Shown: positions 1 through 56,300 of the stretch, one piece after another
Layout of the letters: every line of letters begins with the position of its first letter
Position numbering within the stretch: the first letter of the stretch is position 1
Assembly: GCA_044892525.1 (NCBI GenBank)
Contig: CM097885.1
Location: forward strand, 189,534,001 to 189,598,000
Origin: Schmidtea polychroa
Taxonomy: Eukaryota
DNA: 64,000 nt
Direction: 5' to 3'
Position numbers and translations under genes: made by a program
The notes under the pieces: generated by a model
The model's database searches: none
What the model saw: the letters and a program-made list of their open reading frames with translations, nothing else
Told to the model about the DNA's origin: nothing

Positions 1-420
1 AAACATACTGTTTCTGCTCTGGGTGGTATGATAGTTGTATGATCTATATAAGCTGTATCATCGTTGTAAATTTTTCTCTTTTTACCTCGTGCTCGGATTA
101 ACAATCCAGATGCACAATCGAATACTACTCCTCGTAGTCTTTTTAGGATGTCCATACCCAATAGACATTCGGCTGGGAGACTTCTCATCACTATGATGTC
201 GTGATGGAGCTCTTGATCACATAGCTTAATCTGGCAAGATAATGATCCTATTACATTTAATGAGGATCCGTTTGCTCCTGTTAATTTTACTCCTGCTGGT
301 TTTAGCGACTGCAATTCATGATGGTTTAACAGTTTAGCTTCAATTATGGTACCATCTGCTCCTGAGTCTATCACCGCATTAACTGTATGTCGGTTCACTC
401 TTATTTTTATCATTGGCTTT
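1..420 (-). CDS. pol: Retropepsin aspartic protease and start of downstream Pol, in the same frame as Env
   Basis: VNAVIDSGADGTII (DSGA at 368-357), GANGSSLNVIG flap-like motif, ECLLGMDIL (164-144). No stop found between 3143 and base 1. Confidence 0.9.
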
Positions 421-1094
421 TTATCCAAATTCACTGGGTTATTGACCATCAAGATAGTATCGTGCGAGATGCCGACTGTATTGGCTCTCGTTTGTTCTGC
501 TTCCAGTAATTCAGGATCACTCAGTTGAGGATTATACTCTTTAAATTTAGCTTTAATTGAATCTAACGCTTCCTTTGGATAGTGCACTTTAGGTAATTCT
601 GGCAATGTTGAGCATGTCAAATTATTAAATATGGTATCTTCACCGATTTTCCATTGGTGTCGTCCTGTTCTGAGTGTTGTTTCCCTTGAATGTTCCCGCC
701 CTTCGTTTGGTGAGGATGGTAAACTCCTCAGAGTTTGCAATTGTACATATCTTGGGCTTCTCTTGAATCTGGGTGACCTTAAGTCGTATTTTTGGTCGGA
801 ACTGTCATATTCTCCTTCTGATGACTGTTTTTTCACGTAGATTTCCTTTGATTGGTCATATGGAGGAAGATATTCCTTAAATCTCGATTTTCTTTGTTGC
901 TGAATCGGTTTTTTGTTGTAGTTCTGTTTTCGTGATTGATTTGATCTTGAGGATGTTTCACGAGAGCCTCCATTACCTCCTCCCTTAGAATTGTTATCGT
1001 CCCGATAACTAGAATACTCCTCCATTTCTGTTCCAATTACTTCATGTTTGACCAAATGTTTCTGTCTAATTTCTTTAATTTCCTTTCTGTGATG

Positions 1095-2951
1095 TTTGAA
1101 TAATGCAAACTCTGCACACATAGGACATAGTCCTAATAGCAGTTTCCATGACCATCCTCCAATTTTGAATATGCTATATGTTGACATCAGTTGTGTAATT
1201 ATCAGCTTTAAAATTACAAATATTGCGTAAATTTCTGAACATCCCGCAACGAATATACCAAAATTGGTAAATCGTCCCCATATTTTCATCATTACGTTCT
1301 TTGCTGCTTCTTTATAGTGTTCCGGTCCAAATAATAGATTGTAATCTGGTCGTATTAAGCTATCATGATAAATTGTTCTTATAATTTGCGTGATACCTCT
1401 GTCTCTGATTTGTGGGAATAGCAATGTTCTACTTGCTTCCTCGATATCGTCGGGAGTGTAAATCCCTCCTTTTGCTAATTCGTCCAGTGACTTGAATTCC
1501 AGATTATCTTTTAGTTTAGTTACCTCCAAGGTCTCTACCCGTTGTGTAGATGGTTTTCTTTCCGGCAGGGATATCCACATGTCATTTATTTTGTATAATG
1601 GTGATATTGCCGGGTTGCATATAGCTGGTTGAGGTTTAGCGTTTTCCTCCAGTAACTTTCTGGTTACAGGCATAACAAATCTCAATTTTCCCTGGTAAGA
1701 CACTGGCAGTTCTAGAGTGCACTGATTAAATCTGGCTAATTGTACTTCCACTGGTTTACACTCATAGCTATATATAGCTTCCCCCATGATTCTGCCAAAC
1801 ATTCCGTCTTCCAATAACATTGGAGTAACCAACTCTGGGTTAACGATAGATCTATTTCTGACTATTTCACAATTTAACTTGCAATCGTTTAGTATCACCT
1901 CTTGATACATATCCTGCATTTGTCCTTGGAGGTCGTGATATAAATAATCTACTTTATTATTTATATAATTCGTGATTTTGATATCCTTTACGTGTAAGAC
2001 CTTAGAATTTCGAATATATTCTTTTGACAGGAAGATTCCTTTGTAGTTCGTCTCGTATACTCTTTTTCCACATTTAGTCTTTTTATCTTTTCGGACGAAT
2101 CGGATTGCTTCCGTCTTGTCTTCCGATATCAACACTAGAGGTGTGTTTTCTTCTCCGATATCTTCCTTCTCTTGTTTGTTGATTTTCTTCAACATTTTTG
2201 CTTTATCCCAAACCTTTTCTGGATTCTGGGAGTCCCGATATTTAGTTCCATTTAATTTTCTAAAAGGAATTTTCTTGAGGAAAGCCAACTCACAATGATC
2301 TCTCATTTGTTCGTAAATTAATGTAGTGGTTCCCGTTTTACAACTACCGAACTTGGCATTGCATTGTGGATGTGCCATCAATTTTCCTGTGGCCACATCG
2401 AATGTTCCCTCGTATTCTCGTAGCTCTACTGAGTAATCTTCTATGTCTACCACATAGGAAACTAAATTGCTGCAGCGAATTTTCTTTCTTCCTTCGCAGG
2501 TTCCATCTGAGGCAATTGTTCCTCCTCGGGTGATTGTTATTCCCAATGTTTTCCCAATTTCTGCTGAGATTGAGACCTCGTTGTCTATCCTCACACTTCC
2601 TTTTCGAAATGCATCTAAGCAATCTTCGGGCATTATGTTTACCGGCCTTGGTATTAATGTTGCGGATAGAAAAGCAGAATAGCTATTACTACCGTAATAA
2701 TATTCGAACGTAGCTCTCTGAACTCTACATTCCTTTATCGTGGTTCTATAAAATTCACTCTCTTGGTAGACGTAATATTCTACTTTTTCCCCTTGATGAA
2801 CCTTCTCGGGATACGCCTCTTTGCACTCAATTGCATCTACTAGCGAATATACCCGAGATAGTTTAGGATTTCCACAGTCAAATACTGCTAATGAATTTGT
2901 TTGTTTTAATATGCTCATCATTACTAGGAACATCAGGATCATGCTTGTCAT
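1095..2951 (-). CDS. env: Env-like glycoprotein, chuvirus G / herpesvirus gB-like (class III fusion) type
   Basis: Signal-like MTSMILMFLVMMSIL, then LAVFDCG...VYSLVDAIEC, KCGKRVYETNY, YINNKVDYLY, GEAIYSYECKPVEV, QCTLELPVSY, ELAKGGIYTPDD, then hydrophobic FGIFVAG...IFVILKLII. The Cys spacing and motifs match chuvirus-type glycoproteins as I recall them. Confidence 0.8.
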
Positions 2952-3143
2952 GTTTCCTGTGCCTGAACTACCATTATTTATGGCCTCTTCCACGACTTCA
3001 TATCGTGGTTTTGGAATCGTTTCCTTTTCCCAAAATTTGTTTACAGTCATCCATACCTCCAGGTAATAATCTACCATTTCGACTATTTGATCGATCTCTC
3101 GTTCTATAAGCCTTTTATCATCCCCTACTCGGGCTAAGGCATT

Positions 3144-4663
3144 TTAAATTAACAATGATAGTGATGTTATCACTTTCCCTCTGGTTAATCCTTGCTGTAC
3201 GAATGCTTCTATGGCATCCTGAATATCTCCTGTTGATACATCTTTGGATACTCTGTCCATTGTCTTCTTGACCTCATTCGTTATTTTCTTTACCTCTATC
3301 CCCTTGATTTTTGGAATTCTCCATTCGGGCCTGATAATCCCGATCATTTGTTGTATACGTTGCCACAATAACGACCTTGCTGACGTTGTCTCATCTTCTG
3401 CCTGGTCGTCCATTTCTTGGGCTATCCCTGCTAATGTTTTTAACTGAATTTTCCGAATCGTTTCCGGATTTAACTGCTCCTTGGGTGGAGGTTTCATTTG
3501 ATCCTTTCTAGGACGTCCTCGTCCATCTTTTTTCACTTTCTCCGGGGGTTTTCAATCTCCGGATTTGTTATAGCTTGTGACGTAGTGGCTCCTACGTTTG
3601 TTTCTTCTGGATTTAATCTGACGTACTCTGAGAAGTAATCTTCCTCATCAATGTCCACCATTTGACAGGGATTAATTTCCTCTAGTCTTATTTCCTCGAT
3701 TTCTTCCGCAATATCGTTTGTTATATCTGGCAGTCTCATTAATGACCACTGAGACTCGGGTGGAGTTACTGGGATGATCATTACCGTGGTTGTTGCCAAC
3801 GGTAGACAACCCACATCCACTAGATATTCATCATCATCCACTTGCCTGCCATGGACCATTATCAGGAATATACCTGTAGTTTTATCGGTGGCAATTACAT
3901 CTCTCCTCAATATTTTAACCTTGATATAACAATTATAAATCATTGTTAATGGTTCTTTTCCCATCATTCGCACGTCTAGATTAATGTTGCCTTGTCTATC
4001 AGGCTGACTTCGGATGGCTTTCCCATCTTTCCTCATCAGCGCTTCAATTTGCGTCTGGAATGGGCTTGTTTCCTTTACTACTGGTAGTATAAGTGGAATT
4101 ATTGCTTCCAACAAATCTACTGGTATTCGTAATACTAACATCCAGTCAAGCATTTCCTTTATAGTTTCTCCATCTCGTGGAGATTTCTGCAGTTCCAACC
4201 CTAGTCGCTGGGTTAATTGTTGAGTTTCCTCCAATCTCTCGATTTCCATCTGAGTAATCAAGAATACGCTATCTTGATCCATTACTGCCACTGGCTTCTG
4301 TGCTCTTTTTGCCGTGAGCTTTGTCACTCTACCTGGGAGTATCCCGTTCTGTAGAAGTGTTTGATTTGCTTCTAGTTTTGTTCCACATAAGTATAAGTCA
4401 TATCCTTGATGCTTAATACTTGTCAGTGTTTCAGTTAATTTATGGGCTCGACTTCTTACATTTATATCGAGATTATATTCTTTATCCTGAGGGAGTTTTA
4501 TATTGAGTTGGGCATCTTGGAGATCCCATTCATGTTCCAGGAGTTTTCCTAATTTCCTTAGGATTTTGTACGTGTCGTTATGATACTTTGGATCATCTTC
4601 GACCTGCGATATCAGTTTTACTACTGTATCGATTTCGTGAACTTTAATTTCTGTTTCTCCCAA
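3144..4663 (-). CDS. Unknown polyprotein region between Gag and Env (two ORF pieces, 4663-3533 and 3536-3144)
   Basis: 376-aa and 130-aa ORFs each overlap the previous ORF in the -1 frame. The second contains AT-hook-like GRGRPRK and is in frame with the Env-protease ORF across a single TAA. Confidence 0.7.
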
Positions 4664-5994
4664 TTTCCCAATTGTCTGGCCAGCTTCTGCTGGTATTCAT
4701 ATCTGGTATCTACCAGTTTTAAACACTTTGTTAGGGTATCTGACCCTTCTTTTACCTTTGCTTTCCCTGGCAAGGTTACATCGAACTCGCTTAGTATAGT
4801 GGCCATACTAGGTTCATCATCGGAACTCTCCTCTGATTCCGTTTCCTGAAGGTCCTCTCTAACGGAGTCCTTTTTTCTGAGAAATTCGTCTCTTCCAACT
4901 TCTACCATAAAGATGGTACCTTCTTGGTCGGTCAATCTAGCCAACCTATTCTTTTCCTCCTGGATTTCCATTTCCAGTTGTTGCAGATAAGTTAATCCTT
5001 GATCCTGGTTAACCATAAAAGTCGTTTTAGGCTTATTCACATTACCCTTATCGGTATTTTTATTGAACTGACTCGTGTTTCCACTCTGGTTCTGAGGACA
5101 TGACCTCATCATATGTCCAAATTTCCCACATCCGTGACATTTTATCTTTCCTGATGAATTTACATCATCTCTTTTAATTGTACTAAAATTATTGCTGTTC
5201 TGAGGACTTCTAGTCTTGCAGACCGCAGCAACATGTCCCTTACGTTTACATTTTTCGCATTGCAAATTTTGTACTCTACAATTTTCCGCCCCGTGGTTAT
5301 TCCGTCCACATTTGGTACATTGTATACTTTTACGATTGTCCATACTTTTCCTGCTAGTACAATCTTTCGCTATATGCCCTTTTCTATGGCAATTGAAACA
5401 CTCTACCGGTGTTCTCTCACTGTTTACAAGGAACATGGTTGACTTTTCCAAGCTGCTTTCAATTACGACAGCTTTCCGTGTCAATTCGTCAAAATCATCA
5501 CTAGTATGTAATATTAGAGCGTTCCTCATTGTAGGAGTAAGTCCTGCCCATAGCTGATCCTTAACTAACAATTCTGTTGGCTTTGCCCATGTGGTTTTTG
5601 GTCCAAATGCTCTTTCAGCAATTAATGATAGCTGGTGTGCAAATTCCCCCACATGTTCATTGGCATTTTGTTTTCGATGATAAAATTGTTGTCTAAATAT
5701 CCTTCCCGCATCTCCGGGCAATATTCGAGCAGTCATTTGTTCTCTCATTTCGGCCCAAGTTTTTGGTGCTTGAGCAACTGGTAATGCCATTATATCATTA
5801 TATTTTTCTCTGGCCAGCCCCTTCAAATATATAGGTAACCTTTGTATCATGATATTATCTGGATAAGCATACGCTTTGGCCATCTGATAATATTCGGACA
5901 TAAACTCTGGAAACTCTCCCGGATCGCCGCTGAATGCCTTTACGGGCAGAGCGGGTTATCTGGCAAATGCATTTACATTAGCTTCCTCTGCCAT
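4621..5994 (-). CDS. gag: Gag (capsid-like region plus four CCHC zinc knuckles), premature TAA at 5956-5958
   Basis: FSGDPGEFPEF N-terminal motif; CFNCHRKGHIAKDC, CTKCGRNNHGAENC, CEKCKRKGHVAAVC, CHGCGKFGHMMRSC; in-frame ATG at 5994 upstream of the stop. Confidence 0.9.
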
Positions 5995-6072: not shown

Positions 6073-6090
6073 ATCACGTCGGGCTCACCA
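6073..6090 (-). promoter_or_regulatory. Primer binding site complementary to tRNA-Trp 3' end
   Basis: Minus strand TGGTGAGCCCGACGTGAT. Plus strand atcacgtcgggctcacca matches the animal tRNA-Trp 3' end (ATCACGTCGGGGTCACCA, from memory) at 17/18. Confidence 0.85.
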
Positions 6091-8797: not shown

Positions 8798-9360
8798 TTA
8801 GCTACTGCCTGAACTTCTTCCAATCGTTCTTTTTATCATAACCTTCTTATTTTTTCGGCCTCTATCTGTTAAAATACTCTTCGGTTTTCCAAATCGATAG
8901 ATCCAACTATTAAGTATTGTTTTGAAAATGGTCCCTTCGTCTTGCTTTGTGATTGCAGTTAAAGAAATCAGTTTGCTAAAACGGTCCACCATTACTACCA
9001 TATATTTTTTATGGCGTTTATTTCCATGTAAGCCACATCTATAACAATCTGTTCTAGGAATTTAGCGCTATATCTAGGAATAAATGTTTCCTTGGTTCTT
9101 GTCTGATCGATCTTTCTCTTAGCGCAGATCTCGCAACATCGTAAACAGAGTTGGATTGTTTCTTGCATTTTCGGCCAATAAAACATCTTTTCCATATAAT
9201 GAAATAATTTCTTAACTCCAATGTGACATAATTCTTCATGTAGGGTTGTTGTTATCATCTGCCCTCCCTCAGTCACGCTAGCGTATGTTCTTTGACCGAT
9301 TGCTTTAATAAATTCCATTTTATTGTTTCCATTTTTGTTACTTTCAAAAATTTTTGCCAA
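8798..9360 (-). mobile_element. Ty3/Gypsy integrase fragment (H2C2 zinc domain and core), frameshifted
   Basis: LHEELCHIGVKKLFHYMEKMFYWPKM...CEIC; IVIDVAYM; VDRFSK...YRFGKPKSILTDRG. Confidence 0.9.
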
Positions 9361-9503
9361 TGATCTCGTTTCTTCAATTTTTGTTTTTGGTTTCGTCTAT
9401 AGTATCTCCGTCAGTCTCGCATTGCGTGCTTTATTTGCGATGAGGTCTTGAACAATATCTTCTTCTGATCGTCTTGAATATACAACTTCAGCTAAAGCTT
9501 TCC

Positions 9504-9980
9504 TTATCTGTATCTCAAAATTACAAACGTTTCATCATCTTCCTGTTCCATAGCTGCCAATTCTCTGATTTTGTCAGTTATTGATTTTGTAATTGTGAAC
9601 GTCTGTAAGAACCACACTTTGACTTTCACATCTGTCGTTTCTGTTTCTCTGACGTTTCCCCAGAATGTCTTTGCTTCTGCCACTAATAGCACATCAAAAG
9701 TGCTTGTCAATCGCTGTCCATTTGTCAGCAACAATTCTTCTATATCCCTTATCCATTCTTCGGCTTCTTTAAAACCTCGTCCATCATATCGTCTGATGTT
9801 CAGTGTGAGCATGTCTTGGCATGATTTCGGTAGGCATTCCATTAGCGATTTTGTCGATTTCGAAATGGCGTTGATATTTTGATTTTCGGCGTGGTCGCTA
9901 GTTAAATCCTTCTTTAAATTTCGCAGCAAAAATCTTGAAACTAACAATATATATTTAATCAAAGAATTTATAAATAACAT
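9504..9980 (-). mobile_element. Ty3/Gypsy gag fragment
   Basis: RYDGRGFKEAEEWIRDIE...EAKTFW...MEQEDDETF resembles retrotransposon Gag; lies upstream of the integrase fragment. Confidence 0.7.
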
Positions 9981-10728
9981 GTTTTAATTTTTTCACAAAA
10001 ACCGCCAATTCCAAATTATTTAAACAAAAAAATATCTAACTATAACAAATAGAGTATATTTAAATATTTAAAATCTAACGTGTCCTTTCTATTATTAAAA
10101 CAACTATAATTAATAAACATTAATAAACATTAATTATTGAACATCATTCTACTATGTCAAGATCAAGGTTAACAGAGTTATAGAAACAAAATAAATTACC
10201 AACCAAAACACAGCATAAACTGTAATTATGATCATTTAATATATGTAGATGAGTCAATCTGCACTAAAGACAAATGGACAAATTACAAAGTATAATAAAT
10301 TGAAACAGATATTAAATAAATCGAAATTATAATTTAATAATATAAATAATTTATATTCCATAATTAAATATCATTCTAATCATTGTTGTTAAAATACATT
10401 GAATGCATTATTTACCTAGTTACTGTTTAATTAGAAATTTACTGTCCTAATAATTAAAGAAACATTTTTACTTTAAATGTTTTAAAATTTTTTTAATGAT
10501 TTTAAACGTTTGTGGAAGGAATTAATTTTAATAAGTAGGGTTTTTTAACATAAATTTTTTAATATACGAATGGTCGATATCATAGTATGAATTTTTTAAA
10601 GTTTGGTCAGCACAGATGTCCTACTGTCAGCAAACGGTTAAGTGATTTATTTTTCAAATATTTTGTATTGAATTAGCGAAAAACAATTTTGATTAATTTA
10701 ATGTAAATAATTTTGCAATTTAGATTAA

Positions 10729-12080
10729 ATGTCAAAAATAAATGAAAACTTGAATAAAATTTCCCAGTTGCTTTCAGAGCACAAATTTATGATTGTCAGT
10801 GATATAGCTGACGAATACAAATGTGGAATTTGCAAAGGAATTATCAACAATGCCCATCAAATAATATGCGGATGTAATTTTTGTATGGAATGTATTAATC
10901 AATATATTGGCAATGGCGGGGCTAAATGTCCAGCATGCCAATATGAAAATGTATTAGAGATTTCAAAACATCACAAATTGAACTTACAAATTTCTACAAT
11001 TACCGTGAGATCTCCAATTAAAAATTGCAATCATGAATGCCAGCTCACAGAAATGGACGAGCATTTGAGATTATACTCAAAAAGAAATGTGGAATGCCCG
11101 TTTTGCGGTATTGGCTGTCAGTTGAAGGATATAAGCTGGGATAAGTTGAATAAGCATTCCATCTCTAATATTGACAACTACAACAATATGAGAAAAGATG
11201 AGGCAATTGAATCATTGAGAAATAAAATCAATGCGATAAAGGCAAATCAAATATCTGATTGATTTATTAATAACTGGCATAATTCAGCAAGAAAATCGAG
11301 AGCTGAAAACCATGATGAGAAATAGTAATAATAATTTGTGGATCAAATTGGATCAGATGGATATCGAGATAAATGACAGGTGCAGAAATGATACGGTCAA
11401 ATCGATAAATGAGCAAATTGAATCTGTGAGAGTAAAATAATTGATTGAATTGATCTGATTCAAATCAATCAATTGGAATTGGAACAGCAAATGAAAATTA
11501 TCGACAGAAAATGCCAAGTGAGAATTGAGAGAATTTGATTATTGTTGATGATAAATTGATCTCAGGAATTGAATGGAAATGTGCAAATCATTCACCAGGT
11601 GAAGGCTGACAGTGATATGATGGCGAAGGCAATGAAGGGTGAAATGGATAAACTGACAAGGGAAATAAATCGAATCAATAAATTCCTGAAAATGCGCCTT
11701 GATGGGGAGTTCCTGTTGTCAATCGGTAAAATCAATGAAATGCAATGGATGTGCAGTGATTCATTCTATAATCTCCAGAATCCATATCCAATGCAATTGG
11801 GGTTGATTAATGCAGCTGATAAATTGAATGTTCAGTTATGGATTCATTCTGCTGCATTTGATGATGATTTGCAATGGCCAATGAAGGCAGAAATAAATAT
11901 TTATATTAGATCATTAAATAATCAACAATCAAAATCATTGGCAAATCACTAACAATCAAAAAACCAGCAGATAAATCACATGAACGAAGTGATGCATTAT
12001 CATTTACCCATGCAGATCTGAAAACATTACAAATGCTTGATAATAATTGTTCACTTCTTTGTTCTGTTAAATTTAAATAA
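10729..12080 (+). pseudogene. TRAF-like (RING, zf-TRAF, coiled coil, MATH) probable pseudogene
   Basis: RING CGICKGIINNAHQIICGCNFCMEC...KCPAC; zf-TRAF-like segment; MATH-like SDSFYN...AFDDDLQWPMK, ending CSVKFK-stop at 12080. Several stops and frameshifts; no clear introns. Confidence 0.75.
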
Positions 12081-25700: not shown

Positions 25701-25869
25701 ATATTGAAATGTAAAAGAATTTAAAATACGAGCCGCAAAAAGCGATGGTTATTAGATGGGTGGTGACTATAAATAGGTTAAAAACCGCTGAAAGAACCGT
25801 CGAAAATTTTTTTATTAAAAACATTATTTTTTCATTAAATAAGGCTTAATTTATCACTTTATTGTTTTA

Positions 25870-25931
<62 letters not shown>

Positions 25932-26808
25932 TAATAACTCAACAAAAATATTCTATCTTTATCAGTATATTTTATATGTAATTTTATAAATTTCACCTAT
26001 ACGAGCAGTCTTATTTACACTAAAACTTCCTTAGACACTTGCTATGTGGCCAAATTTGTATATTAATATATTGAAATGTAAAAGAATTTAAAATACGAGC
26101 CGCAAAAAGCGATGGTTATTAGATGGGTGGTGACTATAAATAGGTTAAAAACCGCTGAAAGAACCGTCGAAAATTTTTTTATTAAAAACATTATTTTTTC
26201 ATTAAATAAGGCTTANNNNNNNNNNNNNNNNNNNNNNNNNNNNNNNNNNNNNNNNNNNNNNNNNNNNNNNNNNNNNNNNNNNNNNNNNNNNNNNNNNNNN
26301 NNNNNNNNNNNNNNNNNNNNNNNNNNNNNNNNNNNNNNNNNNNNNNNNNNNNNNNNNNNNNNNNNNNNNNNNNNNNNNNNNNNNNNNNNNNNNNNNNNNN
26401 NNNNNNNNNNNNNNNNNNNNNNNNNNNNNNNNNNNNNNNNNNNNNNNNNNNNNNNNNNNNNNNNNNNNNNNNNNNNNNNNNNNNNNNNNNNNNNNNNNNN
26501 NNNNNNNNNNNNNNNNNNNNNNNNNNNNNNNNNNNNNNNNNNNNNNNNNNNNNNNNNNNNNNNNNNNNNNNNNNNNNNNNNNNNNNNNNNNNNNNNNNNN
26601 NNNNNNNNNNNNNNNNNNNNNNNNNNNNNNNNNNNNNNNNNNNNNNNNNNNNNNNNNNNNNNNNNNNNNNNNNNNNNNNNNNNNNNNNNATATTCTATCT
26701 TTATCAGTATATTTTATATGTAATTTTATAAATTTCACCTATACGAGCAGTCTTATTTACACTAAAACTTCCTTAGACACTTGCTATGTGGCCAAATTTG
26801 TATATTAA
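25701..26808. repeat. ~367-bp tandem repeat with (TAA)n core, spanning an assembly gap
   Basis: 25701-25847 recurs at 26068-26215; 25948-26066 recurs at 26690-26808; (TAA)n at ~25868-25927. Confidence 0.9.
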
Positions 26809-27231
26809 AACTGTTGAGAAAATGCTGAAAATCACGATTCTAGACTATTTGCGACAACTAATTTATATTTTATATCTAAATAGTTATATTCCCTTCATAA
26901 ATAATGGAACACTGTGTTGTTAATACAATTGTATATTTACATGGCCAGAGATTGTTCAGCGGTCATAAAATTCAATTGAAAAATATATAGAAATTGATAA
27001 AAATTGATAAAAATATTGATAAAAATATAGAAATTGATGAAAATCTTTTATTTTTTGGTCACCTTTAATCTGTTTTCTATTTTTGATGATATTTTATTTA
27101 TTTTTATTCTGAAAAAAATCAATTTTTTGTATAGTATAGAAAATTGATTTGTGATAGAATGAAAGTAAATTATATCAATATTATTGTATATTAACAAAAA
27201 AAAGTCCAATTGAAGAAAATGAAATATTTAC

Positions 27232-28597
27232 TTCTCTTCCAATTGCTGTCGTAATTCATGCACCTCAGCTATACTTTCATCGCGACTCTTTGTGAGAGCT
27301 TTGATCATTGATTCCACTTTTGCCATTTCTTCAATTCGAACCCGCTGCAATTTTGATTCCCAATTCTCCTTTTCTCCTTCTTTTATTTTACTCATTTCCA
27401 AATCCTTACAAACCGCATATTCCAATTCATTTCTCAACTCCAACATTTCTTCTTGTTTCTTTCGCAACTGTTCAACTAAATTCTCGATTTCGAATTTTGC
27501 ATTTCTCAGTTCGGTTTCTTTCTTCAAATTTTCCCCCGTCATTCTCGACACCAAACGAGCGATTTCTGAGTTTTTTCCCGAGACGTTTTCTTTTTCTTTT
27601 TCCACTTGATTTGCTAATTCTTTCGTTTTGTTTTCAAATTTCTCCAGTTCCAATTCGAGAATTTCTTTTTCTTTTTCGATTTTCAATTCTTTTTCTCGCG
27701 CTGCATTTAAAACGGATTTGATTTCGTTTTCCAATTTTTTGGCAGTTTCGATTTTGCTTTTTAATTTATCGTTCTTTTCGTTGATTCTTCTCGTTAGATG
27801 TTCGATTTCTTTCACTAAGTTTGTTTCGTTTTCTTTTGCGTGAAGTGCTTCGGTTTCCCGTTTCATTTTTTCGATTGATATTTCACTTTTGTTTGCCAGC
27901 TCCATTTCTGTTAATTTCATTTCCAATTCTCGGATTGTGTTCTCTTTTTCGGTGAGGTTTCTCAAAATTTCCGCTTTACTTATCCTAGTTAAATCCAACT
28001 CTTTACTGGCTAATCGATATTTCAGTTCATAATTCATCATTTCCGTGTGGACTTGTTCGGTTTTCCTTTTCAATTCTCCTTCTCTTGAACGAAGGGTTTC
28101 TTCGACATCTGCCATTAATGCATATTGCTTTTCTTTGGTTTCGGATTCGAGCTGGATTATTTTTCTTTCTAATTCTTTCACGACAGTGGCATTTTCATCT
28201 TTTACTCGTTGAATTTCTTTTATTTTCTCATTCTTAATGGATTGTGAATCATTGAAAGCTTTATCAATAACTTGTTTCATTTTAGTTCTTAACTCTTCTT
28301 TTGTTTCATTTGACATTTGTAACTCAGTTTTTAATCTATCTACTTCCACACTTAAAAGACTGATTTTCTCTTCATTTTCATAAACTGAATCTCGTAAGTT
28401 AATATTTTCCTGTTCGATTTCATTTATTTCTTTATCCCGTTCTTCTAACAGATTCAGATTATGCTTAAAATCTATTTCCAATTGAATAAATTTTTCTTGA
28501 AATTCCATTAAAGCAATTTCAGCTTTATTGTGTTCTATTTTCGTTTTTTCCAATTGCTCCAACAAAAGATCTTTCCATTCTTTTTCCTTCTGAAAAA
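27232..28597 (-). CDS. CCDC57: CCDC57 coding exon 2 (large coiled-coil exon)
   Basis: KEKEWKDL, DFKHNLNLLEERDKEI, ELERKI...ELKYRLASKELD and WESK...ESMIKALT follow the remembered human CCDC57 motifs in order. Donor GAGAA|gtaaat explains the ORF-track stop. Confidence 0.9.
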
Positions 28598-28680
28598 CTA
28601 AAATTAAATTTTAAATAACTTACATATTTAATATAAAGTGAATTTTTAAATGAAAATTTAAAACTTAAATTAAATATTAC

Positions 28681-31972: not shown

Positions 31973-34105
31973 TTAATGTGAATTTTGTGGCTGAATACTA
32001 GAAGCCAGTTTTTCAATGTCAGGTTGAAGTTTAGTTGTTGCCAGAATCATAAGTCCATTCGAGTTCGAATCAGTAAGGCGTGAACGATTCTTGCTTTTAA
32101 TCAATTTCATTGCAGAAAATGACTGCTCGCATCTGTATGTGCTACCAAAACGACAAACATAACGTTGTGCAAAAGATCGCATATGTTCAAAGTCACTCTC
32201 TGGGAGCAGGTTCCAAAATGATATCATATCATCTGCAGTTGGAATAACCGGAAGCTCGGCGAATCGACTTTTCAAAACTGAGTTACACTTCAGATCTATA
32301 ATTTCAAGTTGCAAATTCTCATCTAGGCAGTTGATCCTTTTGTCTGGAAAGTTGAAAGGATTGGTAAAAAGAGCCGCATTGTCAGACTGATCTGCAAATT
32401 CACTGAATCGTGACTGAAAAGCTGTCAAAAGTTCGACAACCATACACCTATATTTGTCTTCATCAAAGTCATTACCTGTCATCCTTTCTTTCATGTGTTG
32501 AAAATTGTCAGATTTTTTTTGGATAACTGATTGGCAAATAATTGTAATTTCATTTTGAAAGAAGCAATACAGTTACACAGATTTGCAAACAGATTGTTAC
32601 TTGCTTGCAACTTCAAATTTAGATTGTTGAGATGCCCTGTAATGTCCACCAAGAATGCTAAATCATTCAGCCATTCATTATTTGAAAGATATTCACGTTC
32701 TATAGGTAACTCATTAATTTCCGCCAAAAATTCCAAAATACTTCCTTTTAAATCTCAGAATCGCGACAGAACTTTACCTTTTGACAACCATCTGACCTCA
32801 CAGTGCAGAAGAAGTTCACCATATTCAGCATCTAATTCTGAAATAAACTGTCTAAATTCTCGCCTATGCAATGATTTTGCACGGATTTTGTTCACACACT
32901 TCACTACTACATCCATAACGTGCTTCATATTCATGGATTTCCCACAAAGCGACTCCTGGTGAATAATGCAGTGATATTTTAAAAGTGGACGAGCAAGAAA
33001 TTTTTCGAGCAAAGACAAACATCCTACATGTCTGCCTGTTAGAGCTGGTGCACCATCTGTGCAAATGCTATCCAACCTTTTCCAATCCAATTTATTTTTT
33101 TCTGCGTATGATTTTAAAACCTCAAACAAATCTGTGCCTTTGGTTGTCTCTTGTATGGACTCAAGTCCAAGCAACTCTTCGATAACCTCGAAAGTATTAC
33201 TCACCGCGCGAATAAAAATTGTTACCTGTGCGGTATCGCTAATGTCAGTTGACTCGTCCATTGCAAGTGAGAAAAACTTGCAGTTTGATGCGTGAAATGC
33301 AATTTGCTCACTAACGTTATTAGCAAGTTCCTCAACCCGTCTTGTCATTGTATTGTTCGATAGTGGAATATCTTTAAACTTGGCTTCAATGTTTTTTTTC
33401 TCCTAGCATTCTGGCGGCTATTTCAAGAACTGGCTTCATAATCTCTTCTCCATCAGTAAAGGGTTTCTTCTTCTTTGCCAAAAGAAGTGCCACTTCATAC
33501 GATGCAATTACCATACTTTTGTTTTGCTGTAGTATAGCAGTAAATAAGGATTGTTGGACATTCATTCCTTTCTCCTTCTTGGCGATAAATTCCCTTCGTA
33601 AATCAGAGGCCATTGGATATTTATCGACCAAATCTGCATGGCTACTGTTGAAATGTCTTTCCATATTATATTTCTTTACAACTGAAACGCTAAATCCACA
33701 AACCAAGCAGACCGGCTTTCCGTTACGACCAAGAGCAAACATATACCTCTCTTTCCACTCGTCATTAAATTCACGACATGCTAAGTTTTTATATTGTTCA
33801 AACTTTCTTTTATCCATGATTTTAAATTCCGAGCTCGTTTTTTAACCAAATTAGATAATTAAAAGAATTTATAAATAAAATCAGAAGATTGAAATAAAAT
33901 CAGATTATTGATGAAAACCAAGCAAAATTAATCGATACACAGTTCTTTTATTATTAAATTGGCATCTGGTTTTATCATGGTTTAAAACGAAGTTCAAGAC
34001 AAACTTTTCCCAAAGAAGGTGTGAATGTGAATTTTTTCTTAGTTTTCTTTGTTGAGCAGAGGGCCACTTTTTTATGCCCGGCGGGCCACGGGTTGGGAAC
34101 CATTG
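31973..34105 (-). pseudogene. hAT transposase (GTF2IRD2/SPIN-like), near full length with frameshifts, 5' TIR present
   Basis: BED-like CLVC...NMERHF, FSLAMDESTD, CTDGAPAL, HCIIHQESLC, EVRWLSKG, FGSTYRCEQSFS; TIR CAATGGTTCCCAACC at 34105. Confidence 0.92.
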
Positions 34106-34229: not shown

Positions 34230-35698
34230 GACGAATGGACAGGCAGAAATGTTAAACGATATTTGAACGTAATCTTACACAGTAAAAATAAAGCGCATGC
34301 CAATTGAAAGTTCGTGCAATGCAGTTAAGTTGAAAAATTTGGTTAAAGAAAAATTGCTTTGCTTTGGTCTGAAATTTGCGGAAGACATTATCGCTTCCAC
34401 AAACGATGGAGCTGCAATGATGAAAAAATATGGAGGGTTAATAGAAACTTTGTTCCAATCATTCTATTCACCTAGCAGTAATTGATGTTTTTTATAAAAA
34501 AATTGTAACCGAAAACATAATTTTTGATGATGTTGAAGAAATAATTACAACTTTTAGACCAGATATTAATAAAACATTAGCAGAAACCAGAACCGTTATT
34601 AAAAAATTTTAAAATTCACCGGTAATGAACTCAATTTTGCAAAATTATGTCAGAGACCATAAAGGCAAAAATTTGAGTATATGTTAGATTGTAAAACCCG
34701 CTGGAATTCTCTTATCCCAATGATTGAATATTTATTAAAATTGAAAGAATGTATCAAGAAAGCACGAATGATATTGGTTGTTTCGATATTTATAAAGAGG
34801 AAAATGAGGTAGTTTTGGAAGAAATTTTAACAAATATGAAACCAACTGAATTGGCTGTTAACGAATTAAGTAAAGAAAGTGCTACGTTGTTAACTTCTGA
34901 AGGTGTTTTTAAATTTTTGTTTGGAAAGCTTCATGAAATTAATACTAGTTTCATTAAAAAGTGCATTAAAAACTTGAATGAACGACAGACGAAATGAAAC
35001 AGTAATGACGTTGTTGCTATATCTCCAGTGTGGAAAAATGCCTCGAGCCAATGGTGATTTTACATATTCGTCAAAAATTGTAGTTTGTGAATTTGCAAAT
35101 GTTCTTTTGAATAAAATATATCCGGTTTCTGCTATTTCTGAAGAAGCTGGTAGTGACAGCGTGTCAACAGACGGTTGCTTCGAAATAGAAGAAACAGATA
35201 CAAATAAGCTTAATCAAGACATGCACAGGGCAATTTCATCCGTTTTGGTCATGAATAATAGTTCTAATACTGGAAAATATATAAGAGATTTAAAATCAGA
35301 TTTTAAAATATTAGATGTAACCAAGAAGCGTACAGAAAATCTTGAACGATTATACGAGGCCTTATTAACTATAAAACCAACATCTACGGCTACAGAAAAA
35401 GTTTTCTCAACAGCAGGAAATTTCTTGACCAAAATAAGAAGCCGCTTAAACTTCGAATCATTAGATGCACTAATTTTCTTAAAGTGTTATTTTTTAAATA
35501 AAGATAAATAATTCTATACTCTACTCATCAATTATATACTATTTTTTATACTCTATAGATTATAATATATAATGAATTAAAAATATAAAAATATATGAAT
35601 TACAAATATGTTGTTTTTGTTAGAAATACTCGGTTAATTTTCCTTACAGATACTCGAAAACTCGGTTAGTTGATTTTGCCGAGTAATTGTTAGCCCTA
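34230..35698 (+). pseudogene. Second hAT-family transposase remnant with 3' terminus
   Basis: TNDGAAMM, CKTRWNS, PTSTATEKVFSTAG...RSRL..ESLDALIFLK dimerisation motif; end TTAGCCCTA at ~35698. Confidence 0.85.
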
Positions 35699-49565: not shown

Positions 49566-50479
49566 TGATTACTGTATTATTAATAAGATTATATTTTTTA
49601 TTAATTCTCTTTAAAAGCCTCCTTTTTGATGTGAATTGATTTNNNNNNNNNNNNNNNNNNNNNNNNNNNNNNNNNNNNNNNNNNNNNNNNNNNNNNNNNN
49701 NNNNNNNNNNNNNNNNNNNNNNNNNNNNNNNNNNNNNNNNNNNNNNNNNNNNNNNNNNNNNNNNNNNNNNNNNNNNNNNNNNNNNNNNATTTGGGCTACA
49801 TAAAAAAGCTGACGCCGAAAAATCTATAATCATACTAGGTCATTGTTAATATATGGCATGAATCGCTGTGGCCGATTGACGACACACTGTATATTCGATA
49901 TAAACGACCTGTTAATTTAACAAATAATTTATCATAATTAAAATATAAAAATAATCCATAAAAAGTGTATATTTAAGTCTATATTCTCTTTATTATAGAA
50001 TATTATCAGTAATTTATTAATATTTAGTTCATTTTTTTAATTAAAGACCCTATAAAAATGAAATAAATATTTAATAATAAGTTTAGAATATTTTATCATA
50101 GAAATTATTACAAGTTGGTAGTTGCAATTATAGATATATAAAAATATTATAATTAATATTATCAAAATTTTCATATATTTTATCATAAAAATTATTTTTA
50201 TCCCCTACAGACGAAAACGTAAACTCGCTCAATACCTCTCGGATTATGAACTTCAGTGACTACCTCCACCGTCATTGTCGCCTTTATCTTTCGATACGAT
50301 CCACGTAATTCGGCGGGCATTATTGTAGTGCCTCTAACTTCCATATTAATAAAAATATCAATTTAAACTTAAAATATATTATTAAATTAATTGTAACTAA
50401 ATCAAATTAAAATCATTGTTTAAATAATCTTTTCTTTTAAAAAAAACAAACGATATAAAACAATTCATGAATCATTTGA

Positions 50480-53399: not shown

Positions 53400-56300
53400 A
53401 TTTGGTAGACTCTTTTAGTGATCAATTCCGCATTAGGCGTTGCTATTCTCATCATTATACATATTTCCTCCGCTTGCGGTCTTGGTTTCAAGCTCAGTTC
53501 GTCCTGGATTTTTGATAACTGGTCTGCTTTTCGATTTAGTCGTTGTAGTGAATTGCTTGATGCAACCGGTCCACCGCCTCATCGAATGCGTCAATCAAAG
53601 CCAGAGAGGTGTAATTGATGTAGGGTTCCGTCTTCGGGACCACTGGGACTACGTTCTGGTAGGTCCAATCATGGATCTTGTACCAGATCCATCTGGACCT
53701 CAGGCGGGTGAGTTCTTCCTCCTGGTCCAGTCTGGTGACTTCGTCTGCCTCCTGAGTTGTTCCTAGGCTCGAGTCGGTTGATGAGGGACCGGCCTGCACA
53801 TTTCTTGATCTAGTGTTGGGCATGTCTATAATGATAGAATTTAATCGAAGTTTTGTTCATGCGCCCCAGTTTAGTCAACGAAGGACGCTTGGTACGTGGT
53901 TACATTTCGAACTCTAGCATCATACTCATTCCATCGAATCGCTAATGATTTCTTATGATTTAAAGCGGACCCCCCAACCCCTAGTTGGTTCGATTTACTT
54001 CTGGCTCGAATAATAGTCTATGTCATCTTCATTGTCGGTGGAATCGTCTTCCGAAATTTCACCATTTTCTAACCGCTTCAATATTCTCTTCATCTCTTCT
54101 GGTCGCATTTTTGATAAATTTCTATAATAAAATAAAAATAATTCCAACACCAAGCTATGCAGAAAAATAATGAAACGGAAGTTCAAAAAGTTTTTATAAC
54201 TAAAGAATTAGTAGGTAGGTTTTATGTAGGGCGGAATGCCTGAAGCATCAAAATTGATACTCACAAAAATAGCACTAGTTTCTTCAAGTAAAACATGCAC
54301 TCGCAAAAAGTAATTATATCATAGCGAAAATAATATATTCACTTACCTCAAAAGTATTTATATTCTTCAGAAAAAGAAAATATATCAAATTTGTATTCAA
54401 CAAAACTTTTAGTAAAATGTGTTTATTTGTTCACTTTGCCGCGCAAGTAATATGTCATAGATAAAATAAGACAATAATGACATTTGTTTTTTTTTTAATT
54501 TCGTTGGAAAGAATATTATACAACAGTAAAATACGAACAGCCAACCTATAAAAAAACTAATAGTAATGTGAACATTCGGTTTAAAAGATTGGTATCAAAA
54601 TTGAAACTCTAGGTTATTAAGGGTTAAAGGAGAATAATACCATGAAATGGATTTATAGCTTTATTATTTTAAATGATAATAGTACAATGAAATGGATTTA
54701 TCATTTTATAATATTAAATGATAATATTACAATAAAATGGATTGATCATTTTATGATATCTAAATATTATTAAATGTGATTAATACCATAAAATGGGTTT
54801 CTAATTTTATAAGATTAAATGATAATAGTAAAATAAAGTGGGTTTGTAGTTTTATGGTATCTAAATAATATTAAGTGTTAATGATCCAACGAACTGGATT
54901 TATCATCTCAAGACGAAACTTGGGGTCAATGCAATTTGTAATAATTAAGCTAGACTTTAGTTCGAATACAAGTGAACACACAAGAAAAATTCTTTATGAA
55001 ATAATTTAGAGGTGCTTTTTATAATTAGTCAAATTTATATAGGGGTTGCCGATAACATGATTCTAAATAGTGTGGCATAATAATTAATATCTATATTCTT
55101 ATGAAACGTCCTTCTAGCTGGGGAAACCTCAATAACCAGTTTTTAAATGAACTAAGATGTCTGTTTATGAAAATCGAACGAGGTAGGCTCTCTTATACTA
55201 AGGTAAAATACAATGATCATTAACCTATAATTTCATGAGATGTCTTTTAACCAAGGTTGATTTATGATATGGTTGTTAATAAATAATTAGAGGAGGCATA
55301 ATTTTAGTTCGTACCGATTCATAACCAATTTTACATAGTACGGGTATCGATATAGGACTTTATTGAATACATTTTCGTAATTGGATTTAAGATTTAAGGT
55401 TTATCACCCCAATGATCTGGGATATTAGTATTCAATAGATCATTATAAGGTAGATGATTATAAAATTGAATTTCCCTAGATTCGGGTTATTGGGTACTAA
55501 ATTTCTGATCAATATAACTATGAACAATATCAATAGAATCTATTAATAATATTCAATCTTAAGTATACTAAATAATAGAATGACTTGTGTGATTAGCCGA
55601 CCATCAGAGTGCCTTTGTAGTAAATTGAGTCTGGGATATTTCCCGTTTAAATTTCCCTAATGGTGTGTTTCCTATAGAACAGTTGAGTGTTTATTTTAGG
55701 CATGTCATTTATCGAAAGGTCGAATTAATTAAAATTTTCCTATTTTCCCGACTCAACTGAATACGGTACGATATGCCTTATTGTATTATTTTCCCCGCGA
55801 TTATTATCCCAAAGGTTATTTCGTCCGCATAGTCCCTATGACTACGCCAACTACCGGGATGGGTTTACCCGCCCTACTCATGGTTAAACATATCCGGTTA
55901 AAATTCATAATTTTAATGCATGTAGGGTCGTAGACCCGAATTTGTGAATGTAGATTATCAGTTAGAAACAAGGCTGATCGGCGTCGTGAGTATAACACGT
56001 CTACGACGATGCCGATCACTCTTGTTCCGCAATAGTAAAATTAAACAATAAAACTAAAGTTTGACCAAAAGGGGATTTTGATCCTAACGCATTAATAAAG
56101 CAACAAAAAAAATCAATATAATGAGACAAAATAGGATAACAAATAATAAAATAACAATTATTCATATAATAACGTTAATCAATAGTCCTTACTATTAGTA
56201 TGTTCTGGATCCTCCGAAAAAAATTTTTGGCATAAAAAAGATTAAATTGTGACTAAAATGCGTCGGTATATATACCTATTTTTGTGTGTGCAAATACACG

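What the first reader, a model, noticed from the sequence alone, without database searches (positions are those of the whole stretch)
1..3143. Envelope glycoprotein embedded upstream of the protease, in frame with Pol
Seen: a ~1047-codon minus-strand frame with no stop, from 3143 to the window edge. It is missing from the ORF track because it lacks an end. It encodes in order a signal-like hydrophobic segment (2951-), a Cys-rich ectodomain, a TM-like segment (~1265-1095), a hydrophilic linker and a DSGA protease. Known: env in retroviruses, errantiviruses and most env-bearing LTR elements follows integrase; the motifs resemble chuvirus G / herpes gB-type class III fusogens captured by some LTR elements. 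Inference: a Gag-X-Env-PR-(RT) polyprotein in which an internal signal and a stop-transfer anchor place Env in the ER lumen and return the protease to the cytosol. This would be an unusual and possibly undescribed infectious retroelement architecture.
Basis: partly seen in the sequence, partly recalled or inferred. Interest (0 to 1): 0.92.

Follow-up and report, generated by a model that had tools for sequence, protein, structure and literature searches.

The report
Burro-like retroelement with in-frame envelope
The window edge holds the front half of a retrovirus-like element whose envelope gene, captured from an RNA virus, sits between gag and the protease in one reading frame; this is real and unusual, but it was already described in 2019 for the giant "Burro" elements of planarians.

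Summary
The minus-strand frame 3143->1 is open for 1047 codons (chance about 1e-34) and runs off the window. It encodes a hydrophobic signal-like segment, a Cys-rich ectodomain, one membrane anchor, a disordered linker and a D-S-G-A retropepsin.

The ectodomain is a class III fusogen:
- Pfam PF24664, E 1.6e-78.
- Foldseek best matches are chu-related virus glycoproteins (4.7e-41) and herpesvirus gB (1e-14).

Upstream on the same strand lie a Gag (capsid-like domain, four CCHC knuckles), two ubiquitin-like domains and a PBS-like site.

The order is not a local accident. Thirteen divergent relatives (32-37% identity) carry Env followed by one to seven protease domains in the same ORF. Six of them continue into Ty3/gypsy-type RT and RNase H, five of those also into integrase. 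One has CCHC-Env-PR-RT-RH-IN in a single 2146-aa ORF.

Arkhipova & Yushenova 2019 described env in frame between gag and pol in planarian Burro elements. Gag-env-pol order is also reported for nematodes, bryozoans and flatworms.

This copy looks decayed: one frameshift, one in-frame stop and one lost conserved cysteine. RT, integrase and LTRs lie outside the window. The host was not identified. Verdict: a new member of a known kind.

The parts
6074..6090 (-). Primer-binding-site-like sequence starting TGG, about 170 nt upstream of the gag start. The 5' LTR would end just upstream (higher coordinates); its far end could not be set.
   Evidence: Read. Unique in the window, 0 expected by chance. 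No tRNA gene was available to test complementarity, so this is an inference.
3533..5901 (-). ORF1, gag-like gene (capsid-like domain, CCHC knuckles, ubiquitin-like domains). It is broken in this copy by one frame change that relatives do not share.
   Evidence: both halves match the single 949-aa ORF1 of L001 and the Gag part of P0002.
5608..5832 (-). Capsid-like Retrotrans_gag domain of ORF1
   Evidence: Pfam PF03732, weak (E 0.0017). The homologous region of L001 ORF1 matches at 9e-18.
5086..5403 (-). Four CCHC zinc knuckles (nucleocapsid-like)
   Evidence: Pfam zf-CCHC E 3e-10, three stretches scored; four C-X2-C-X4-H-X4-C motifs read in the translation.
3722..4648 (-). Two tandem ubiquitin-like domains in the C-terminal half of ORF1 (aligned segments 4214-4648 and 3722-4162)
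   Evidence: The internal repeat is seen. Profile A4 of the two repeats plus L001 and L004 segments hits the UBL domains of ubiquilin-2 (2.8e-06), BAG6, ISG15 and NEDD8 in PDB.
1..3536 (-). ORF2, leader-Env-protease polyprotein gene, cut by the window edge. It is broken in this copy by one in-frame stop in the leader that relatives do not share. ORF2 is in the -1 frame relative to the end of ORF1, with a short overlap.
2964..3536 (-). Leader upstream of the signal: AT-hook-like G-R-P motif near its start and a long helix near its end
   Evidence: Alignment A5 with the ORF2 starts of L002 and L003; helix aa 10-39 in the AF2 model; homology to P0001 aa 92 onward and to P0010.
2880..2963 (-). Internal hydrophobic signal-like segment
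   Evidence: Kyte-Doolittle peak 1.56; aligned with the hydrophobic segment of P0001, which has no Met next to it.
1272..2879 (-). Class III fusion glycoprotein ectodomain (chuvirus/mononegavirus G type, gB-like fold)
   Evidence: Pfam PF24664 E 1.6e-78. AF2 pLDDT is mostly 85-97. Foldseek BFVD top hits are chu-related virus glycoproteins, E 4.7e-41, TM 0.60. Foldseek PDB top hits are herpesvirus gB, E 1e-14, about 630 aligned columns. 13 of the 14 invariant or nearly invariant cysteines are present.
1161..1271 (-). Membrane anchor (stop-transfer)
   Evidence: Hydropathy peak 2.12; long helix 607-662 in the model; aligned with the anchor of P0001.
426..1160 (-). Conserved membrane-proximal tail followed by a disordered hydrophilic linker
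   Evidence: pLDDT below 35 for aa 696-855; S/E/K/R-rich; the tail is conserved with P0001 to about aa 696.
129..425 (-). Retropepsin (aspartyl protease) domain with D-S-G-A
   Evidence: Pfam gag-asp_proteas 5e-13 and RVP 4.7e-09; weak PDB matches to retroviral proteases and DDI1.
1..128 (-). Continuation of the same frame beyond the protease to the window edge
   Evidence: tblastn of P0004 aa 1084-1217 aligns down to window base 6.

Best explanation
Window 1 to about 6090 (minus strand) is the 5' part of an endogenous Ty3/gypsy-type (Metaviridae) retrovirus-like element of the Burro-like kind, cut by the window edge just after its first protease domain. Its layout is: PBS-like site; ORF1 = Gag (capsid-like, four CCHC) plus two ubiquitin-like domains; ORF2 (-1 frame, short overlap) = leader, internal signal, class III envelope fusogen captured from a chuvirus-like negative-strand RNA virus, one membrane anchor, disordered linker, retropepsin. 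By analogy with relatives, further protease copies and RT-RNase H-integrase should follow.

Most likely mechanism (inferred, not shown): the envelope is translated as part of the polyprotein, not from its own gene. The internal hydrophobic segment takes the nascent chain to the ER. The ectodomain is threaded into the lumen. The single anchor stops transfer, so the tail, protease and polymerase remain cytosolic, as a giant cytoplasmic tail of a type I membrane protein. Signal peptidase on the luminal side and the retropepsin on the cytosolic side (in the disordered linker) would then separate the parts. This is the topology that flavivirus-type polyproteins use.

This particular copy is probably dead. 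It has one frameshift in ORF1 and one in-frame stop in the ORF2 leader, and one of the conserved ectodomain cysteines is replaced.
For: Shown:
- The frame is open for 1047 codons; the chance of this is about 1e-34.
- The ectodomain is a class III fusogen by profile (PF24664, 1.6e-78) and by fold.
- A retropepsin lies in the same frame.
- Gag, CCHC knuckles and UBL domains lie upstream on the same strand.
- The architecture is conserved. Of 155 related proteins fetched, 13 have Env followed by 1-7 protease-like domains in one ORF. P0003, P0004, P0009, P0015, P0016 and P0151 continue into RT and RNase H, and all of these except P0009, which ends after RNase H, also into integrase.
- Gag and Env share one ORF in P0002, P0007, P0012, P0016 and P0021.
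- The Pol of P0016 is closest to Ty3 (7q5b, 6e-120).
- The hydrophobic signal in P0001 lies about 146 aa inside the ORF with no adjacent Met.
- ORF2 of the window and of L003 has no ATG at its start.

Published: the same in-frame gag-env-pol design, with a Ubi/SUMO-like domain and hits to mononegavirus glycoproteins, is described for planarian Burro (PMC6431247).
Against: - RT, RNase H, integrase and both complete LTRs are outside the window, and no LTR pair was found in any related contig. The retroelement identity of this copy therefore rests on Gag, PR, the PBS-like site and relatives.
- No Burro sequence was available for direct comparison.
- The MATH_TRAF_C and BCL2-like domains reported for Burro were not detected in ORF1 or ORF2.
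- The host was not identified.
- Topology rests on a hydropathy scale only. A second moderately hydrophobic stretch follows the anchor; if it also crossed the membrane, the protease would be on the wrong side.
- No expression, splicing or protein data exist here.
- In this copy a Met sits directly before the hydrophobic segment, which would also allow a separate env message.
Confidence: 0.8

Rival explanations
1. Same element, different expression. Env is made from its own (spliced or subgenomic) message starting at the Met just before the hydrophobic segment, as in retroviruses. Pol is made from a message that lacks env. The frame continuity between env and protease would then not be used for a membrane-threaded polyprotein.
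For: In this copy a Met lies directly before the hydrophobic segment. From general knowledge, all retroviruses and Drosophila errantiviruses express env from spliced RNA. In L001 and L003 the Gag ORF and the Env-Pol ORF are separate.
Against: That Met is not conserved: P0001 has none near its signal. Env-to-protease frame continuity is kept in 13 lineages at 32-37% identity, up to ORFs of 2146-4844 aa. Splicing would not require this continuity. Burro is described as one 4,873-aa ORF. No splice signals were tested.
Confidence: 0.12
2. Local chimera: a chuvirus-like glycoprotein insertion (a non-retroviral endogenous viral element), or a misassembly, that happens to lie in frame between the gag and the protease of an ordinary gypsy element.
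For: Chuvirus-type glycoprotein insertions next to retrotransposons are common in arthropod genomes (PMC7642597). The window contains assembly gaps elsewhere.
Against: The same order and frame continuity recur in many divergent relatives from other contigs and samples. Homology to P0001 runs without a break from leader to tail and resumes in the protease. There are no N runs within 26 kb of the locus.
Confidence: 0.03
3. Domesticated host gene: the long intact Env-protease frame is kept by the host (for example as a fusogen or a restriction factor) while the rest of the element decays.
For: 1047 codons are intact next to a gag region with damage. Env co-option is well known from general knowledge.
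Against: The Env frame has no start of its own in the conserved design. Its leader carries the in-frame stop. A conserved disulfide cysteine is lost. Few lesions over about 6 kb fit a young dead copy as well. No orthologue or expression evidence exists.
Confidence: 0.05

Closest known systems
Burro / GYPSM1 giant gypsy-like LTR retrotransposons of planarians (Jurka 2007; Grohme et al. 2018; Arkhipova & Yushenova 2019, PMC6431247)
   Same: Gag with retrotrans_gag and several CCHC knuckles. A ubiquitin/SUMO-like domain between gag and env. An env region with hits to mononegavirus fusion glycoproteins, lying in frame between gag and protease. Ankyrin repeats and very long polyproteins in relatives (P0151, 4844 aa, against 4,873 aa reported for Burro). 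The window comes from an AT-rich animal genome with TRAF-like genes nearby.
   Different: No MATH_TRAF_C, BCL2-like, BIR or dUTPase domain was detected in the window part. There are four CCHC knuckles (three or two are reported for Burro). Gag-UBL and Env-PR are in two frames here, not one ORF. No Burro sequence was at hand for a direct comparison, the host is unknown, and size and LTRs cannot be seen.
GAG-ENV-POL 'errantiviruses' with gB-type Env in Nematoda, Bryozoa and Platyhelminthes (Chary & Hayashi, eLife 2026, PMC13524379) and the nematode elements of Sacco et al. 2022 (J Gen Virol 103:001739, cited there; paper not held)
   Same: Ty3/gypsy-type Pol in relatives; class III gB-like Env; env placed between gag and pol.
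   Different: The text read here says nothing of an in-frame fusion. Here and in the relatives, env and protease share one frame.
Mosquito BEL/Pao 'Anakin' elements with a captured chuvirus glycoprotein (Dezordi et al. 2020, PMC7642597)
   Same: The same source of Env: a chuvirus-type class III glycoprotein captured by an LTR retroelement.
   Different: A different retroelement superfamily. The Pol of the relatives here is Ty3-type, not BEL/Pao.
Chuvirus and other mononegavirus G proteins; herpesvirus gB (class III fusogens)
   Same: Fold, cysteine framework, and the layout of signal, ectodomain and single anchor.
   Different: Here the protein is not a free-standing gene. A leader of more than 60 aa lies in front of it, and a protease (and, in relatives, the polymerase) is fused behind its tail.
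Flavivirus-type membrane-threaded polyproteins and the foamy-virus Env leader peptide (general knowledge, analogy only)
   Same: Internal signal and stop-transfer segments place glycoprotein parts in the lumen and enzymes in the cytosol. A long cytosolic leader precedes the Env signal.
   Different: No sequence relationship. The analogy is functional and untested.

Membership tests
Class III viral fusion glycoproteins, Monjiviricetes/chuvirus type (Pfam PF24664) | Profile match above the curated threshold | tested here: met
   264.7 bits against a cut-off of 27, E 1.6e-78.
Class III viral fusion glycoproteins, Monjiviricetes/chuvirus type (Pfam PF24664) | Class III fold (gB / G-like domains) | tested here: met
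   AF2 ectodomain pLDDT 85-97. Foldseek: chu-related virus G 4.7e-41, TM 0.60; gB 1e-14 over about 630 columns, TM 0.35-0.39.
Class III viral fusion glycoproteins, Monjiviricetes/chuvirus type (Pfam PF24664) | Conserved disulfide cysteine framework | tested here: inconclusive
   13 of the 14 invariant or nearly invariant cysteines of alignment A2 are present; one is replaced in this copy.
Class III viral fusion glycoproteins, Monjiviricetes/chuvirus type (Pfam PF24664) | Signal sequence and single C-terminal membrane anchor | tested here: met
   Hydropathy peaks at aa 61-88 and 625-661. Signal cleavage and topology were not predicted with a dedicated tool.
Class III viral fusion glycoproteins, Monjiviricetes/chuvirus type (Pfam PF24664) | Trimer formation and membrane fusion activity | not testable with these tools
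   No multimer prediction or assay was available.
Ty3/gypsy (Metaviridae) LTR retroelements | Gag with capsid-like domain and CCHC knuckles | tested here: met
   zf-CCHC 3e-10; Retrotrans_gag weak at 0.0017; homology to the Gag ORFs of L001 and L003.
Ty3/gypsy (Metaviridae) LTR retroelements | Retropepsin with D-S/T-G-A | tested here: met
Ty3/gypsy (Metaviridae) LTR retroelements | RT, RNase H, integrase in that order, Ty3-type | not testable with these tools
   This part lies outside the window. In relatives it is met: P0003, P0004, P0015, P0016, P0151; best PDB match is Ty3 Gag-Pol, 6e-120.
Ty3/gypsy (Metaviridae) LTR retroelements | Long terminal repeats and target-site duplication | not testable with these tools
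   No LTR pair in the window or in the contigs L001-L005, which are too short.
Ty3/gypsy (Metaviridae) LTR retroelements | tRNA primer-binding site next to the 5' LTR | tested here: inconclusive
   A TGG-starting 17-mer at 6074-6090 is unique in the window. No tRNA was available to compare with it.
Burro-like giant planarian gypsy elements | env in frame between gag and protease | tested here: met
   Env and PR share one frame. Gag-UBL is in the adjacent -1 frame here, and in one ORF with Env in P0002, P0007, P0012, P0016 and P0021.
Burro-like giant planarian gypsy elements | Ubiquitin/SUMO-like domain between gag and env | tested here: met
   Profile A4 against PDB: ubiquilin-2 UBL 2.8e-06, BAG6 3.1e-05, ISG15, NEDD8, SUMO1.
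Burro-like giant planarian gypsy elements | MATH_TRAF_C and BCL2-like domains in the polyprotein | tested here: not met
   No such Pfam match in ORF1 or ORF2 at E up to 1. The published detection used HHpred, which is more sensitive, and the Girardia version is reported to lack MATH in ORF1. RING and MATH ORFs lie 5 kb away on the other strand.
Burro-like giant planarian gypsy elements | Length above 30 kb, planarian host, sequence similarity to Burro | not testable with these tools
   The element is cut by the window edge; the host was not identified; no Burro sequence was available.
BEL/Pao elements with chuvirus glycoprotein (Anakin) | BEL/Pao-type Pol | tested here: not met
   The Pol of relatives carries the RT_RNaseH and Integrase_H2C2 domains and is closest to Ty3. 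The Pol of this copy itself cannot be seen.

The most novel reading that the evidence does not exclude
These elements may form a broad, largely uncharted clade of reverse-transcribing virus-like elements, not confined to the few planarians described. They would translate capsid, envelope and enzymes as one membrane-threaded polyprotein, so that the polymerase enters particles as the cytoplasmic tail of the envelope protein rather than only as a Gag-Pol fusion. Tandem arrays of up to seven retropepsin domains would serve as built-in pseudo-dimers to cut it free.
Probability: 0.3. Interest if true: 0.7.

Novelty: new member of a known kind. Interest (0 to 1): 0.4.

Why it matters
Retroviruses and env-bearing LTR elements almost always place env after integrase and express it from a separate message. 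An envelope fusogen translated inside the gag-pol polyprotein is a different solution to making an infectious retroelement. It shows repeated capture of negative-strand RNA virus glycoproteins by Ty3/gypsy elements.

The design itself has been in the literature since 2019, so this locus adds a member rather than a principle.
- The design is shared by at least 13 divergent lineages in public assemblies.
- Forms range from a compact 2146-aa ORF to a 4844-aa ORF.
- Protease domains are multiplied.
- The fusogen's nearest structural relatives are chuvirus glycoproteins.

Tried and rejected
- Exact look-up of the window's Gag ORF in public assemblies: not on record. The sequence beyond the window edge could not be fetched.
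- Scans of IMG/VR and JGI metagenome contigs for relatives: nothing.
- The word-index protein search gave a single relative. The exhaustive HMMER search was needed.
- LTR pairs in L001-L005: none, because the contigs are too short.
- tRNA genes to test the PBS: none in the window or the loci. The PBS-like string is absent from the related loci.
- Sequence search of PDB with ORF2: only weak retropepsin hits, no glycoprotein. The fold search was needed.
- ORF1 C-terminal half and the leader against PDB as single sequences: nothing.
- Single-sequence AF2 of the ORF1 C-terminal half: useless, pLDDT 31. The third fold search was therefore not spent.
- Alignment A3 was found misaligned and discarded.
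- Alignment A5 of the leaders is poor. It supports only the shared G-R-P motif and gave no BCL2-like signal.
- Host identification through a 460-aa neighbouring ORF: only an unnamed metagenome protein at 93% identity. The third word-index search was not spent on it.
- The Sacco et al. 2022 paper and the eLife supplements are not held.
- A canonical -1 slippery site at the ORF1/ORF2 overlap was not found. An A-AAC-CCC heptamer is present but is not of the efficient kind (judgement from general knowledge).
- The Ank-repeat gene after Env-PR-PR in L001 at first suggested an RT-less element. This was rejected once P0151 showed ankyrin repeats between protease copies upstream of RT.

Slips, stated as required:
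2. My early notebook entries record the ORF lister's bounds for the pieces upstream of Env, before I knew they were pieces of broken genes. Those bounds imply where frames end.
Full report
1. Observation.

The minus-strand frame from 3143 to the window edge translates into 1047 codons without a stop. The other two frames of the same stretch carry 96 and 72 stops. At this base composition the chance of such a run is about 1e-34. The longest open run in 1000 shuffles was 155 codons. The ORF lister leaves the frame out because it has no end inside the window.

Hydropathy gives a signal-like segment at aa 61-88 (2880-2963) and a strong anchor at aa 625-661 (1161-1271). There are 15 cysteines between aa 90 and 509, and a hydrophilic S/E/K/R-rich stretch follows the anchor. 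The D-S-G-A protease motif is in the translation. The description is accurate.

2. What the pieces are.

Pfam assigns aa ~80-700 to PF24664, the Monjiviricetes viral fusion glycoprotein family (E 1.6e-78, 265 bits against a cut-off of 27). It assigns aa 907-1005 to retroviral-type aspartyl proteases (5e-13) in the same frame.

An AlphaFold2 model built on 61 aligned relatives has pLDDT 85-97 over most of the ectodomain and below 35 over the linker aa 696-855. Foldseek against predicted viral structures puts chu-related virus glycoproteins first (4.7e-41, TM 0.60). Qin-, xinmo-, rhabdo- and nyami-like G proteins follow, then gB. Against solved structures, herpesvirus gB comes first (about 1e-14, probability 1.0, about 630 aligned columns, TM 0.35-0.39).

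3. Surroundings.

Upstream on the same strand lies a gag-like gene (3533-5901). It has a weak Retrotrans_gag match, four CCHC knuckles and, in its C-terminal half, two tandem copies of a domain. A profile of these copies with two relatives hits the ubiquitin-like domains of ubiquilin-2 (2.8e-06), BAG6, ISG15, NEDD8 and SUMO1.

About 170 nt upstream of the gag start there is a unique TGG-starting 17-mer (6074-6090) in the position of a primer-binding site. I could not test it for lack of a tRNA.

Above about 6500 the G+C content falls from about 0.40 to 0.22-0.33. The 3' LTR is outside the window and no LTR pair exists inside it.

The rest of the window is AT-rich animal DNA. It holds a RING plus MATH/TRAF gene, hAT remnants and a fragment of another element's integrase.

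4. Relatives.

The word-index search gave one relative, P0001 (34% identity). It has the same order: leader, internal hydrophobic segment, fusogen, anchor, tail and two protease domains in one 1582-aa ORF. A 949-aa Gag-like ORF precedes it.

The exhaustive search found 1312 proteins at E <= 0.001.
- Of the 155 proteins fetched, 13 carry Env followed by one to seven protease-like domains in the same ORF.
- P0003 (2855 aa), P0004 (2627), P0015 (3243), P0016 (2146) and P0151 (4844) continue in that ORF into RT, RNase H, the integrase zinc domain and the integrase core. P0009 (1251) continues into RT and RNase H and ends there.
- P0002, P0007, P0012, P0016 and P0021 also have Gag in the same ORF as Env.
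- P0016 is a compact CCHC-Env-PR-RT-RH-IN single ORF. Its best solved relative is the Ty3 Gag-Pol polyprotein (6e-120), ahead of caulimovirus and foamy-virus enzymes.
- P0151 has ankyrin repeats between protease copies. This explains the ankyrin gene that follows Env-PR-PR on the short contig L001.
- Separate RNase_T-type exonuclease ORFs follow pol in L002 and L003.
- None of the relatives places env after integrase, and none has a stop between env and protease.

5. State of this copy.

The two halves of the window's gag-like gene both match the single ORF1 of L001 and the Gag part of P0002. The gene therefore carries one frame change that relatives lack.

The stretch between gag and the open frame belongs to ORF2. 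Its start shares an AT-hook-like G-R-P motif with the ORF2 starts of L002 and L003, and P0010 runs through the junction without interruption. ORF2 therefore carries one in-frame stop in its leader.

The frame change between ORF1 and ORF2 (-1, short overlap) matches the two-ORF layout of L001 and L003. I take it as native, not as damage. I saw no efficient slippery site there.

One of the 14 invariant or nearly invariant ectodomain cysteines is replaced.

In total: one frameshift, one stop and one loss of a conserved cysteine. This looks like a young but probably dead copy.

6. Mechanism.

Frame continuity from Env into protease and polymerase is kept across lineages that share only about a third of their residues. 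This argues that ribosomes read through Env into Pol.

The signal is internal. P0001 has about 146 residues and no Met before it. ORF2 of the window and of L003 has no ATG at its start.

An internal signal takes the chain to the ER and the ectodomain goes into the lumen. The single anchor stops transfer, so protease and polymerase stay in the cytosol as an oversized tail. Cleavage by signal peptidase and, in the disordered linker, by the retropepsin would follow.

All of this is inference from sequence. The number of membrane spans was judged from a hydropathy scale only. The main rival is separate expression of env by splicing. It is weakened by the conserved frame continuity but not excluded.

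7. What is known.

Arkhipova & Yushenova (Genome Biol Evol 2019, PMC6431247) describe the giant Burro/GYPSM1 gypsy-like elements of Schmidtea mediterranea and a relative in Dugesia tigrina.
- These have a polyprotein of about 4,900-5,100 aa.
- Its N-terminus is a Gag with retrotrans_gag and two or three CCHC knuckles.
- It carries a Ubi2/SUMO-like motif and a BCL2-like motif.
- Its env region gives hits to fusion glycoproteins of arthropod and fish mononegaviruses.
- PR-RT-RH-IN follow, and ankyrin repeats are present.

Chary & Hayashi (eLife 2026, PMC13524379) report the GAG-ENV-POL order with gB-type Env in Nematoda, Bryozoa and Platyhelminthes. For nematodes they cite Sacco et al. 2022, whose title says that an RNA virus glycoprotein gene was captured by a metavirus.

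Dezordi et al. 2020 (PMC7642597) describe chuvirus glycoproteins captured by mosquito BEL/Pao elements.

The architecture is therefore described. The window's element shares its defining features: env in frame before the protease, a UBL domain between gag and env, and a mononegavirus-type fusogen.

It differs in detail. It has four knuckles, two frames rather than one ORF, and no MATH or BCL2-like match by Pfam.

I could not compare it directly with a Burro sequence and I could not name the host.

8. Verdict.

The claim of novelty is not supported. I rate it a new member of a known kind, with interest 0.4.

The session's own additions are:
- the breadth of the clade in public assemblies;
- the multiplied protease domains;
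- the compact single-ORF form;
- the structural placement of the fusogen next to chuvirus glycoproteins.

9. Slips.

My early notes hold the ORF lister's bounds of the upstream pieces, which imply where frames end.

The consensus lines printed by the alignment tool were not used.

Noticed in passing
window 8858-9396 (-) and 9507-9983 (-): Fragment of an integrase (H2C2 zinc domain 4.3e-11 and part of the core) from another, decayed LTR element, with a 159-aa ORF of unknown kind just upstream. It lies on the same strand, 3 kb upstream of the gag described here.
   Followed up: partly
window 10729-11259 (+) and 11560-11949 (+): RING finger and MATH/TRAF ORFs, together a TRAF-like gene. Burro elements are reported to carry MATH_TRAF_C and RING-like motifs, so this could be a host gene or element-derived. 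Not resolved.
   Followed up: no
window 31976-33402 (-), 34978-35508 (+): hAT transposase remnants (dimerisation domain, DUF4371).
   Followed up: no
window 25701-26808 and 49643-49788: Two N runs (26216-26689, 49643-49788). The first is flanked by exact duplicated blocks of 148 and 119 nt, which looks like an assembly-gap artefact. Left untouched.
   Followed up: no
window 27231-28610 (-): 460-codon open frame with no Pfam family. A 727-aa metagenome-derived protein is 93% identical (P0154). Function unknown.
   Followed up: partly
window 54610-54856: Tandem repeat with a unit of about 45-56 nt, four copies.
   Followed up: no
L003 6512-21046 (P0151); also P0001, P0002, P0003, P0005, P0012: Relatives carry tandem arrays of retropepsin-like domains after Env (two to seven per ORF). 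P0151 has ankyrin repeats and a C2H2 finger between them. Retropepsins work as dimers, so the arrays might act as built-in pseudo-dimers; this is untested.
   Followed up: partly
L002 9547-11622; L003 21702-22841; L001 13-2340: A separate ORF with an RNase_T-type 3'-5' exonuclease domain accompanies these elements, downstream of pol in L002 and L003. A RING ORF follows it in L003.
   Followed up: no
window about 3490-3536 (-); L002 and L003 ORF2 starts: An AT-hook-like G-R-P motif lies at the start of the ORF2 leader and is shared by the window and two relatives.
   Followed up: no
P0010; P0004: P0010 is a chimeric gene model that joins Env pieces to an ion-channel domain. P0004 is filed in NCBI under a Flavobacteriaceae metagenome bin, which is probably a mis-binned animal contig.
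   Followed up: no
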